From Podarcis erhardii (taxonomy: Eukaryota), in the NCBI GenBank assembly GCA_964252035.1, contig OZ176212.1: DNA of 64,000 nucleotides. One strand, given 5' to 3'. Of this stretch, positions 15,783 to 18,219 are shown in pieces; positions within the stretch are counted from its first letter, which is position 1; every line of letters starts with the position of its first letter. The position numbers and the translations under genes were made by a program. A model generated the notes under the pieces. That model saw only the letters and a list, made by a program, of their open reading frames with translations. It did no database searches and was not told the DNA's origin.

Positions 15783-17077
15783 GTGAGCATAAGTATGACT
15801 TTTGACCCACTTGGATGGCCCTATGCTCCAGACACAGGAAGAGGAGTCCATGAATGGCAAGCAGCGTGATGAACATAGTTAAAGGGGGCAGAGAATTCAT
15901 GAGAGTGAGAAGGTTTAATGTCAGGAATAGCACTGTTCTCTCCCCCACTGATTCCCCTCCCCAAGAGACAAGTTTAAACTTTGGAATAGTTCCATTATTA
16001 TATTAGCTATCTGCTCAGGCTTGGTGACCATTCTGTAGTTGTGCCCTGAGACAGCCAGGGCATCTAGAAGGAATCCTTTCCTGTGATAACGAATTCTGCT
16101 AATGAAGTGTGAGCATCTGTTTTTCTTGGGAACAGTAAAGAATATGGGAAACACAACAGAGGTCCTCTGCTTTAGTAGCACCCCTGCACCAGCCATCACC
16201 AAGCTATACACGGTAACTTCATCTCACAATAAGTTGTTGCTTTAAGCAAAAAACCCTGCTGTCGCCACCTGATAAGGGGAGGGGGATGTAGACTCTAGAT
16301 ACCCACGCCTCTAAAGACTTCTTCTACAACTGTGGAATGGGGGTCCGCAACCCCAGCTACCCCCGATCATTTGCTGGTATTCCTGGGATTGCTTAGGGGT
16401 CTGGGAAGACTCCTGGCTATCTCTAATGTAGTGACCCAAAGGCTGTAAACGGAGCTCTTTTTCCTCCGCAGAGCCCTTAGCACTTAAGCAGGGAGTTGAG
16501 TAGGAGGGCCCAGGTGCAGGCTCCAGCCCACCCCCTCAGCACTTCTGGCTAATGAGAGAGGAGATCCAGAGGATAAAAGTTGTATCAAAGTTAAGGCCTT
16601 CTGAGAAGATCAATTTTTTTATTTAAGAAGGCACCTATGGCGACAACAGTAGCATACAAAGGCAAGAATTAACCCTGCTTTTTTGTGAAGGCAGAGTTAA
16701 GATTGGAAACTGGACAAAGCTTTCTTCCCCACTAGAATTATTTTTTGGTAAAAATCATTTGACCCTGCTTTCCAGAAGAGGAGTTAACCCATGCCTGTAT
16801 GTTCCACTCCTCTGCCGACTGACAATGGCAAAATTCATCAGCCGTCTGCTGAGTGGTATGAGACATATCGAAGTGCACACCATCTTTATTCGCTAGCTCT
16901 TGCATTCTCCATCTCTGGTTCCTGTACCTTCTTCTGCACACTGCAGTTATATTCCTGATGCTCTGTCCTCCTCCAATTCTATATGTCCCTCCCTCCCCAT
17001 TGAAGATTTTTGGTTTCATGTCATCTTATTTGACGATGCTATTTTGCATCCCACTGACCTTCTCCACCCACATGCAG

Positions 17078-17207
17078 AGAGAGAAGGGCAAGGAAGACAC
17101 GAACGGTGCTCAAAACTGCCCCAATAAGACTGGGCCTCCTTCCCCCATCACGGAGCCCTCCATCCCTGAGGAGAGCCCACTCCCCGACTTGCACCCATGT
17201 GATGCCA
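17078..17207 (+). CDS. MAPT: Candidate tau cassette exon '12A' encoding an alternative C-terminus
   Basis: Branch point CTGAC 17054-17058, pyrimidine tract, atgcag acceptor, perfect GTAAGT donor 17208-17213. 130 nt, open in phase 0: REKGKEDTNGAQNCPNKTGPPSPITEPSIPEESPLPDLHPCDA+A. Confidence 0.75.
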
Positions 17208-18003
17208 GTAAGTAGTTACCTGTTCTCATGAGCTTTGTGAGAGCTAGATGGGAATCAGATGCCCAGAGCTTGGAGGGTGTGGGGTGGTAAGGCATCATAC
17301 TAGTTTTCTCTGATTTTTGTTAGATTGAAAACCTGGTGTTCTGTACTAACCCTAGCAGCTTAATGTGAAAAAAACCCCTGTACTTAAAAAATATTTTGGA
17401 CTATCAGACCTCTATCACCATTTCACCTATCTGCAAGATTGGCTGCTGGGATCTTTCATCTGGCATGGTTTCAAGATAAGGGATGCCCAGTTTGATAGGA
17501 GACTCAACTTCTTTGCCTGAAAACATTCATAAATTTATTTGGATAGGTCACCTTTTCATAACATGGTAGTACAATTCTGGGAGAAGCTGCTTTTGAAAGA
17601 AGTTGACATTTTTGTATGTTCCATTTCATAGGCTCATAGCACACAGTTTGCATACAACTTCTGTCTATATGAAGCAATGTAGGATTCCTAGATCAAGGAA
17701 ACATGGATATCAATATTTTTTTAATTAAAAAAAATGTCAGCCAAGCAAATGAGTGGGACTGCCCTTATAACAACACACTAAAAACTGAGCCTGGATTTTC
17801 CTAATTCTGAGCATACATCAGTGTTTTGCCAAAGCAGCGGCGATGGGGAGAAGAGGAGCTGCGGCTGAACGAACCACTTTGGCATACCAGTCAAACGCTA
17901 GTGAAGGTATAGCTGAAGTGAGTGGTGGGGAAACAGCATCAACCCCCTCCACTTTTCCCTGTCCTGCTCTCTTGTCCTGACCTGCCGATGTCTCTCATTC
18001 CAG

Positions 18004-18219
18004 ATTGAGAGCCACAAGCTGACCTTTCGTGAGAACGCCAAAGCCAAGACTGACCATGGAGCTGAAATTGTCTACAAATCACCCACTGTATCTGGAGATG
18101 CCTCCCCACGGCGCCTTAGCAACGTCTCCTCTACTGGAAGCATCAACATGGTGGACTCCCCACAGCTGGCCACATTGGCCGATGAAGTGTCTGCTTCCCT
18201 GGCCAAGCAGGGCTTGTGA
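18004..18219 (+). CDS. MAPT: Tau exon 13, coding part (C-terminal tail, stop TGA 18217-18219)
   Basis: ctcattccag|ATT GAG AGC... Translates [71 protein letters not shown]. Confidence 0.98.

What the first reader, a model, noticed from the sequence alone, without database searches (positions are those of the whole stretch)
17054..18008. Tau cassette exon '12A' that swaps the whole C-terminal tail and stops on a TGA hidden in exon 13
Seen: branch point CTGAC (17054-58), pyrimidine tract, CAG acceptor, a 130-nt (3n+1) exon 17078-17207 open in the phase left by exon 12, and a perfect GTAAGT donor. Splicing to exon 13 gives A|AT TGA, so Asn-stop using nt 18004-18008. The product ends ...GGGNKK-REKGKEDTNGAQNCPNKTGPPSPITEPSIPEESPLPDLHPCDAN*. 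The stop lies in the last exon, so the mRNA should escape NMD. Read-through of the donor would give ...CDASK*. Established: canonical human tau has no such exon, and its tail carries the end of the AD filament core, S396/S404 (PHF-1) and the caspase site D421, all of which this isoform would lose. From memory, MAP4 uses the same logic (a frameshifting exon before an 'ATT GAG' last exon gives a ...ETN end), and some predicted fish tau isoforms have (R/K)EKGKE...N tails. Inference: an ancestral MAP4/tau C-terminal switch kept in reptiles and lost in mammals, giving a 4R tau with an acidic, proline-rich tail.
Basis: partly seen in the sequence, partly recalled or inferred. Interest (0 to 1): 0.85.

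Follow-up and report, generated by a model that had tools for sequence, protein, structure and literature searches.

The report
Conserved alternative tail exon of tau
A 130-base exon hidden in the last intron of this lizard's tau gene is really spliced in, replaces the protein's normal tail with a short acidic, proline-rich one, and is shared by lizards, snakes, turtles, birds and bony fish; gene-prediction pipelines already list it, but I found no paper that describes it.

Summary
Exon '12A' (17078-17207) has a CAG acceptor and a GTAAGT donor, is 3n+1 long, and continues the exon-12 reading frame. Splicing to exon 13 gives A|AT TGA.

RNA contigs and raw stranded RNA-seq reads from a close relative carry both predicted junctions exactly: 13196>17078 and 17207>18004.

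The exon is not new to databases. RefSeq and Ensembl models in more than 30 species end with this tail, and it is 100% identical in Zootoca, Lacerta and Podarcis. The listed models come from squamates, turtles, birds and teleosts, including zebrafish mapta.

In seven genomic loci the exon is 130-148 nt and always 3n+1, and a Logan contig from an eighth squamate carries the same 130-nt exon. The start (AGAGAGAA) and the donor (CCA|GTAAGTA) are invariant from fish to lizard.

Within squamates the exon and about 100 nt on each side are conserved at the nucleotide level. Synonymous sites are suppressed (pS 0.03-0.10, against 0.26-0.52 in exons 12 and 13). This is the pattern of a regulated alternative exon.

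The isoform loses the pseudorepeat, the end of the filament core, and the PHF-1 and caspase sites.

I found no paper that describes the exon.

The parts
13084..13196 (+). MAPT exon 12 (repeat R4). It ends ...GGGNKK in phase 0, with donor gtaagc at 13197.
   Evidence: Sequence. tblastn match 100%. RNA joints leave from 13196.
17054..17077 (+). Predicted branch point CTGAC (17054-58), pyrimidine-rich tract and CAG acceptor of exon 12A.
   Evidence: Sequence. The 40 nt upstream are identical in gecko, snake and the Logan squamate, with one difference in Zootoca. CACTGA(C/T) is also present in turtle. Branch-point use itself is inferred.
17078..17207 (+). Cassette exon '12A', 130 nt (3n+1), encoding REKGKED...HPCDA plus the first base of the final Asn codon.
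   Evidence: Sequence. RNA joints 13196>17078 and 17207>18004. 100% identical tail in RefSeq XP_034990818.1. Orthologous exons in 7 loci.
17208..17216 (+). 5' splice site GTAAGTAGT. GTAAGTA is invariant from teleost to lizard. Read-through gives SK*.
   Evidence: P0002 is a read-through ORF from an unspliced Logan contig.
16978..17307 (+). Squamate-wide conserved block: the exon plus about 100 nt of intron on each side.
   Evidence: Identity to gecko and snake is 88-100% upstream, 93-95% in the exon and 82-90% in the first 50 nt downstream. Beyond about 150-200 nt it falls to unalignable. Synonymous divergence is suppressed.
18004..18008 (+). First bases of exon 13 (ATTGA). AT completes the Asn codon and TGA (18006-18008) is the stop of the 12A isoform.
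   Evidence: Sequence. All squamate models end ...CDAN or ...CDVN. Birds and fish end in N, H or Y, which are xAT codons.
18004..18219 (+). Exon 13 coding part of canonical tau (IESHKLTF...AKQGL, stop 18217-18219). This sequence is lost from the 12A isoform.

Best explanation
Exon 12A is a genuine, ancient, regulated cassette exon of MAPT. When it is skipped, exon 12 joins exon 13 and canonical tau is made.

When it is included, its 3n+1 length shifts the frame, so the first five bases of exon 13 read (A)AT TGA. Translation then ends one residue into the last exon.

The product keeps the N-terminus and all microtubule-binding repeats. The 72-residue basic exon-13 tail is replaced by a 44-residue acidic, proline-rich tail. 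The lost tail holds the pseudorepeat R', the end of the filament core, and the PHF-1 and caspase sites.

The stop lies in the last exon, so the mRNA should escape nonsense-mediated decay, and it keeps the normal 3'UTR.

Shown here: the anatomy, both junctions in RNA, conservation of position, phase and splice sites from teleosts to squamates, and nucleotide-level constraint on the exon and its flanks.

Inferred: that inclusion is switch-like between tissues or stages; that the isoform binds microtubules more dynamically, because deleting the pseudorepeat raises the off-rate more than sixfold in PMC5221586; and that it is poor at forming tau filaments, by analogy with human W-Tau in PMC8909800.
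For: Sequence anatomy.

RNA evidence:
- In run X12 one contig joins 13196>17078 at depth 48.
- A 2143-nt X12 contig runs 12A>exon 13>3'UTR at depth 43.
- Run X1 has the joint 17207>18004 at depth 38.
- The raw stranded run X23 has 5 reads from 4 start positions across 17207>18004, on the strand expected for a + strand gene.
- Loose ends at 13082 carry the end of exon 11, so these are normally spliced mRNAs.
- Run X4 shows only 13196>18004, which makes the exon alternative rather than constitutive.

Database evidence:
- A phmmer search of 1.8 billion representatives finds only tau.
- RefSeq and Ensembl tail-bearing isoforms exist in squamates and in turtles, birds and teleosts.

Genomic evidence:
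- In seven genomic loci and one Logan contig the exon lies between the R4 exon and the last exon (the contig holds only the exon and its flanks).
- Its length is 130, 136, 148 or 145 nt, always 3n+1, with AG and GTAAGTA kept.
- Turtles extend the tail by exactly the +1 frame of exon 13, because their Ile codon is ATC.
- Conservation peaks on the exon and its flanks.
- pS is 0.03-0.10 against 0.26-0.52 in the neighbouring exons.
- The tail has pI 4.55 and 20% Pro.
Against: - Within squamates pN/pS is about 0.4-2.3, so the codon pattern does not by itself show selection on the tail's amino-acid sequence. The constraint could be mostly on RNA.
- A second frame of the exon is also open in most species, so openness alone is weak evidence.
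- The RNA comes from a close relative of the assembled animal (about 1-2% intronic divergence), and the tissues are unknown.
- Inclusion ratios cannot be measured. Exon-12 depth in the raw run is zero although 12A transcripts contain exon 12, so reads there were probably removed by the tool's human-likeness filter.
- There is no protein-level evidence.
Confidence: 0.9

Rival explanations
1. The exon is mainly an RNA-level switch. Its conserved role would be to divert pre-mRNA away from canonical, pseudorepeat-containing tau. The tail peptide would then be a by-product with little sequence-specific function.
For: Synonymous sites are as conserved as non-synonymous ones within squamates (pS 0.03-0.10, pN/pS about 1). 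The flanking intron is 88-100% identical across about 100 nt. The most deeply conserved parts are the purine-rich exon start and the donor. The middle of the tail diverges strongly between squamates, birds and fish.
Against: All length changes between lineages are multiples of three, and the exon is 3n+1 in every locus. There is no in-frame stop in any lineage. Motifs are kept at the protein level across classes: REKGKE/D everywhere, EP.IPEESPLPDL in squamates and turtles, and IKIEDS across teleosts. The stop escapes NMD, so a protein is expected.
Confidence: 0.25
2. It is an alternative terminal exon. The donor would be read through (...CDASK*) and the transcript would end by intronic polyadenylation, not by splicing to exon 13.
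For: A Logan ORF (P0002) and some fish models (P0124, P0134) read through the donor. RNA contigs cover the flanking intron at low depth.
Against: Contigs and raw reads join 17207 to 18004. No pile-up of molecule ends was reported (table 6). Intron depth (3-9) is far below exon and junction depth (38-48), as expected for pre-mRNA. P0002's contig also contains the upstream intron, so it is unspliced sequence.
Confidence: 0.05
3. It is splicing noise or an annotation artefact: a chance ORF with good splice sites that prediction pipelines propagate by homology.
For: All database entries are automatic predictions. I found no paper that describes the isoform.
Against: Junction-bearing contigs reach the same depth as exon 13 in two independent studies, and a third study supplies raw reads. 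Position, phase and splice sites are conserved over more than 400 My, while the rest of the intron is unalignable even within squamates.
Confidence: 0.02

Closest known systems
Predicted tau isoforms with the REKGKE... tail in RefSeq and Ensembl (e.g. XP_034990818.1 Zootoca vivipara isoform X3; Lacerta agilis X3; Podarcis lilfordi X4; zebrafish mapta XP_068080795.1)
   Same: It is the same exon. The tail is 100% identical in three lacertids and 82-95% in other squamates. Turtles, birds and teleosts match at 48-76% identity over the R4 exon plus tail. All have the same position, phase and stop logic.
   Different: Nothing differs in substance. The window is another lacertid-like genome carrying the orthologous exon. 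These entries are automatic models, and I found no published description or experiment.
Human W-Tau (intron 12 retention; PMC8909800, PMC8217066)
   Same: Both isoforms keep everything up to repeat R4 and replace the exon-13 tail with a short new peptide. W-Tau is reported to bind microtubules and to be less aggregation-prone. This gives a testable expectation for the 12A isoform.
   Different: W-Tau arises by reading through the exon-12 donor, ends at an intronic stop and poly(A) signal, gives an 18-aa Trp/Cys-containing peptide, and is described as human-specific. Here the exon-12 donor is used. A discrete exon 3.9 kb into the intron is spliced in, the normal last exon and 3'UTR are kept, and the exon is conserved across vertebrate classes.
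MAP4 canonical C-terminal tail versus its pseudorepeat-type end
   Same: According to PMC5221586, the classical MAP4 cDNA was thought to lack the pseudorepeat, yet gene-based reconstructions contain one. This fits two alternative MAP4 ends, one of them an acidic, proline-rich tail. I recall the tail's composition from memory and did not test it.
   Different: I could not obtain any MAP4 sequence or gene structure with these tools. Sequence homology, exon phase and stop logic are all untested.
Tau exon 10 (regulated cassette exon of the same gene)
   Same: It is a cassette exon in the repeat/C-terminal half of MAPT. The purine-rich start of 12A looks like a GAR-type splicing enhancer; I did not test this.
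   Different: Exon 10 is in frame (3n) and adds a repeat. 12A is 3n+1 and changes the C-terminus. No significant RNA structure was predicted around the 12A donor (z = -1.0).

Membership tests
Conserved vertebrate MAPT 'REKGKE' tail exon (as in RefSeq/Ensembl models) | Lies in the intron between the R4 exon (exon 12) and the last coding exon. | tested here: met
   Window: 13196 | 17078-17207 | 18004. The same order holds in six other gene loci.
Conserved vertebrate MAPT 'REKGKE' tail exon (as in RefSeq/Ensembl models) | Length 3n+1, AG acceptor and GTAAGTA donor. | tested here: met
   130 nt with cag/gtaagta in the window. The other loci are 130, 130, 130, 130, 136, 148 and 145 nt, all 3n+1.
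Conserved vertebrate MAPT 'REKGKE' tail exon (as in RefSeq/Ensembl models) | Tail starts (R/K)EKGKE/D and the product ends on an xAT codon completed by the last exon, followed by TGA. | tested here: met
   REKGKED...CDA|N* in the window. The tail is 100% identical to P0001, P0017 and P0003. Tails end in N, H or Y in 33 of 44 distinct sequences. Of the other 11, six are the turtle frame-shift extensions and the rest include models that read through the donor.
Conserved vertebrate MAPT 'REKGKE' tail exon (as in RefSeq/Ensembl models) | Spliced into mRNA at both ends. | tested here: met
   Joints 13196>17078 and 17207>18004 in runs X12, X1 and X23.
Homologue of the MAP4 tail exon (ancestral MAP4/tau switch) | Significant sequence or profile similarity between tau 12A tails and MAP4 tails. 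| not testable with these tools
   No MAP4 sequence could be retrieved.
Homologue of the MAP4 tail exon (ancestral MAP4/tau switch) | Same intron position and phase, a 3n+1 length, and a stop created in an ATTGA-starting last exon of MAP4. | not tested
   The only support is an indirect literature statement that MAP4 has both a unique tail and a pseudorepeat-like motif (PMC5221586).
W-Tau-type isoform (intron 12 retention) | Read-through of the exon-12 donor and translation of the start of intron 12. | tested here: not met
   The exon-12 donor at 13197 is used and 3881 nt are removed before 12A. Reading through would give [11 protein letters not shown], which is unrelated to this tail.
NMD-targeted poison exon | A premature stop more than about 50 nt upstream of the last exon-exon junction. 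| tested here: not met
   The stop at 18006-18008 lies 3-5 nt inside the last coding exon. The X12 contig runs on about 1.6 kb further, presumably into the 3'UTR, with no joint seen within the laid stretch. That no intron lies further down the 3'UTR is inferred.
Alternative terminal exon with intronic polyadenylation | Transcripts end shortly after the exon instead of splicing onward. | tested here: not met
   Contigs and reads splice 17207>18004, and no cluster of molecule ends was seen.

The most novel reading that the evidence does not exclude
Exon 12A is the tau counterpart of the exon that encodes MAP4's canonical acidic, proline-rich tail. On this reading, a two-tail switch (pseudorepeat tail versus acidic tail) predates the vertebrate MAP2/MAP4/tau duplications. 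MAP4 would then use the acidic tail by default. Non-mammalian tau would toggle it in a switch-like, tissue-specific way through an ultraconserved splicing unit, and mammals would have lost it from MAPT. [quoted passage not shown]
Probability: 0.3. Interest if true: 0.65.

Novelty: already known. Interest (0 to 1): 0.42.

Why it matters
The exon-13 tail holds the pseudorepeat that slows tau's release from microtubules, the last strand of the disease filament cores, and classic phosphorylation and caspase sites. An evolutionarily old, regulated way of making tau without that tail bears on several questions.

- It shows that canonical mammalian tau is only one of two ancestral C-terminal designs.
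- It matters for non-mammalian tauopathy models: the listed zebrafish mapta models carry this tail.
- It gives a natural comparison for human W-Tau.
- It points to a testable origin shared with MAP4.

The value of the finding is that the exon is annotated but apparently undescribed. It is not a new discovery in the sequence.

Tried and rejected
- Rfam scan of 16700-17600 found no match.
- An RNA fold of the exon with 100 nt on each side gave z = -1.0, so no structure explains the nucleotide conservation.
- Pfam found only the tubulin-binding repeats and nothing in the tail.
- The PDB sequence search matched only the repeats. No chain covers the tail and no MAP4 chain was found.
- Eight literature searches and reading into six papers found no description of the exon.
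- The supplements of the MAP evolution paper do not contain the motifs.
- A tail-only homologue search with the squamate tail found only squamates, and the same search with the turtle tail found only turtles. The word index is too coarse for this, so those blanks say nothing about crocodilians, amphibians or mammals.
- Looking up tail-bearing isoforms directly in assemblies failed, because only the longest product of each gene is indexed. I solved this by using the X1 isoforms.
- Earlier notes of this scan held nothing relevant.

Full report
**What is in the window**

The window holds the 3' half of a squamate MAPT gene on the + strand. The repeat exons lie near 296, 4111, 11020 and 13084-13196, and the last coding exon starts at 18004.

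- CTGAC at 17054-17058, then a pyrimidine-rich tract and cag.
- A 130-nt exon (17078-17207), open in the frame left by exon 12.
- The donor gtaagt.
- ATTGAG at 18004, so inclusion reads GCC A|AT TGA.
- Reading through the donor gives SK*.

**RNA evidence**

I laid four public runs on 13000-18400.
- In run X12 one contig joins 13196 to 17078 at depth 48.
- A 2143-nt X12 contig runs from 12A across 17207>18004 into exon 13 and about 1.6 kb beyond the laid stretch, at depth 43.
- Run X1, from another study, has the 17207>18004 joint at depth 38.
- The raw stranded run X23 has five reads from four start positions across the same joint. Their orientation is the one expected for a + strand gene.
- Loose ends at 13082 carry the end of exon 11, so these are ordinary spliced MAPT mRNAs.
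- Run X4, from a second species label, shows only the canonical 13196>18004 joint. The exon is therefore alternative.

Intron depth is 3-9, as expected for pre-mRNA.

Three cautions apply:
- The runs come from a close relative of the assembled animal (about 1-2% intronic differences, none in the exon).
- The tissues are coded and unknown.
- Exon-12 depth in the raw run is zero although 12A transcripts contain exon 12. The tool's filter for human-like reads probably removed them, so no inclusion ratio can be given.

**The exon is already annotated**

A phmmer search of the 43-aa peptide against 1.8 billion representatives returned two proteins.
- One is RefSeq XP_034990818.1, tau isoform X3 of Zootoca vivipara, with a 100% identical tail ending ...CDAN.
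- The other is a 102-aa ORF from an unspliced Logan contig that reads through the donor.

Further searches found the tail in predicted tau isoforms of these taxa:
- Squamates: Lacerta, Podarcis, Anolis sagrei, Tiliqua, Varanus, Eublepharis, Pogona, Salvator, Heteronotia, Sphaerodactylus, Notechis and Thamnophis, at 82-100% identity.
- Many turtles.
- Several birds.
- Many teleosts, including zebrafish mapta.

In birds and fish the product ends in N, H or Y. These are all xAT codons, as expected if a split codon x|AT is followed by TGA from an ATTGA-starting last exon.

Turtles end ...DANRVSQADLPRECQSQD. That is exactly exon 13 read in the +1 frame, because their Ile codon is ATC and not ATT.

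**Genomic comparison**

I fetched the MAPT genes of Zootoca, Eublepharis, Thamnophis, Chelonia, Calypte and Danio aesculapii, plus the Logan contig.
- In every gene locus the exon lies between the R4 exon and the last exon.
- Its length is 130 nt in the five squamates, 136 in the turtle, 148 in the hummingbird and 145 in the fish. It is always 3n+1, with an AG acceptor and a GTAAGTA donor.
- The exon start AGAGAGAA.G.CA and the donor CCA|GTAAGTA are invariant in all eight sequences.

The exon passes that test on all counts.

**Kind of constraint**

Among squamates, identity to the window is 88-100% in the 100 nt upstream. It is 93-95% in the exon for gecko and snake, and 82-90% in the first 50 nt downstream. 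It then falls to unalignable levels beyond about 150-200 nt.

| Measure | Exon 12A | Exons 12 and 13, same species pairs |
|---|---|---|
| pS | 0.03-0.10 | 0.26-0.52 |
| pN/pS | 0.4-2.3 | 0.03-0.12 |

So the constraint acts on nucleotides in general, including synonymous sites and flanking intron. It is established that conserved, regulated alternative exons show reduced Ks, raised Ka/Ks and conserved flanks (I did not check this against a paper here).

Coding constraint shows at deeper distances:
- All indels are multiples of three.
- There is no in-frame stop.
- Class-wide motifs persist: REKGKE/D everywhere, EP.IPEESPLPDL in squamates and turtles, IKIEDS in teleosts.

No Rfam family and no unusually stable fold explain the conservation.

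**Mechanism and likely consequence**

*Shown:* inclusion shifts the frame and ends translation at 18006-18008, inside the last coding exon. NMD is therefore not expected, and the usual 3'UTR is kept. The new tail has pI 4.55 and 20% proline, against pI 8.35 and 4% for the exon-13 tail.

*Inferred from the literature:* the lost segment contains the pseudorepeat, and its removal raises tau's dissociation rate from microtubules more than sixfold (PMC5221586). From my own knowledge of the solved filament structures, the disease filament cores extend into the first residues of exon 13; only shows that many such tau chains are in the PDB and that none covers the new tail. Human W-Tau loses the same tail through intron 12 retention, still binds microtubules and aggregates less (PMC8909800). 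By analogy, the 12A isoform is expected to be a more dynamic, poorly aggregating tau. None of this has been tested experimentally.

**What remains open**

PMC5221586 notes that the classical MAP4 cDNA lacks the pseudorepeat while gene-based reconstructions contain one. That is compatible with two MAP4 C-termini but says nothing about phase or homology.
- *Mammals.* Loss in mammals is also untested. The only hint is that no mammalian or amphibian tail-bearing model appeared among the best 120 hits, where bird models with 63-67% identity did appear.
- *Literature.* Eight searches and reading into six papers found no description of this exon. The library lacks most subscription-journal papers, including the original chicken, Xenopus and zebrafish tau cloning papers.

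**Verdict**

It is too narrow about which animals keep the exon, and it is untested for MAP4 and for mammals.

As an object the exon is already known to annotation pipelines in dozens of species, so it is not a discovery in this window. Its breadth, its nucleotide-level conservation and the apparently dominant use in some samples make it a moderately interesting, under-described piece of tau biology.

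Noticed in passing
L005:61517-61655 (Thamnophis); protein P0029 (Notechis): In snakes the last full codon is GTC, not GCC. This creates a GT four bases upstream of the normal donor (GAT|GTCAGT). 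The Notechis isoform X2 model reads the exon in frame into IESHKLTF, a 42-aa insertion instead of a tail swap. That is what use of this upstream donor would give.
   Followed up: partly
L006:92916-93051 and 94184 onward (Chelonia); turtle proteins: Turtles have ATC, not ATT, at the start of the last exon. The frame-shifted reading does not stop at once and adds 16 residues after the Asn (RVSQADLPRECQSQD) taken from exon 13 in the +1 frame.
   Followed up: yes
window:16978-17307: The exon plus about 100 nt on each side behaves like a squamate ultraconserved element. Synonymous divergence is 3-10 times lower than in exons 12 and 13, and the 40 nt upstream of the acceptor are identical in lacertid, gecko and snake. 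No RNA family or stable fold accounts for it.
   Followed up: partly
window:13250-13253: RNA contigs of the two related species carry a 37-38-nt insertion here, in intron 12 just downstream of exon 12, relative to the window. It looks like an ordinary indel.
   Followed up: no
proteins P0067, P0115, P0124, P0134: Some bird and fish models continue past the exon's donor or into other sequence, for example ...IKIEDSSKY... and a 136-aa tail in Rissa. Public annotation of this exon's 3' end is therefore inconsistent.
   Followed up: no
protein P0132: An Osmerus eperlanus protein named 'microtubule-associated protein 4 isoform X2' carries a tail almost identical to salmonid tau tails. It is probably a tau orthologue with a misleading name, and it is not evidence about MAP4.
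   Followed up: no
window:35250-35363: A weak tblastn match of the tail peptide (39% over 38 aa, E = 0.002). It is most likely proline-rich low-complexity similarity. It lies near a feature another first-stage note places at 35678-35927.
   Followed up: no
window:13194-13196 versus L002:62760-62762: Exon 12 ends NKK in the window, as in the Lacerta and Podarcis models, but NKR in Zootoca. Exon 11 also differs (HHK against HHR). The window is therefore a lacertid other than Zootoca.
   Followed up: no
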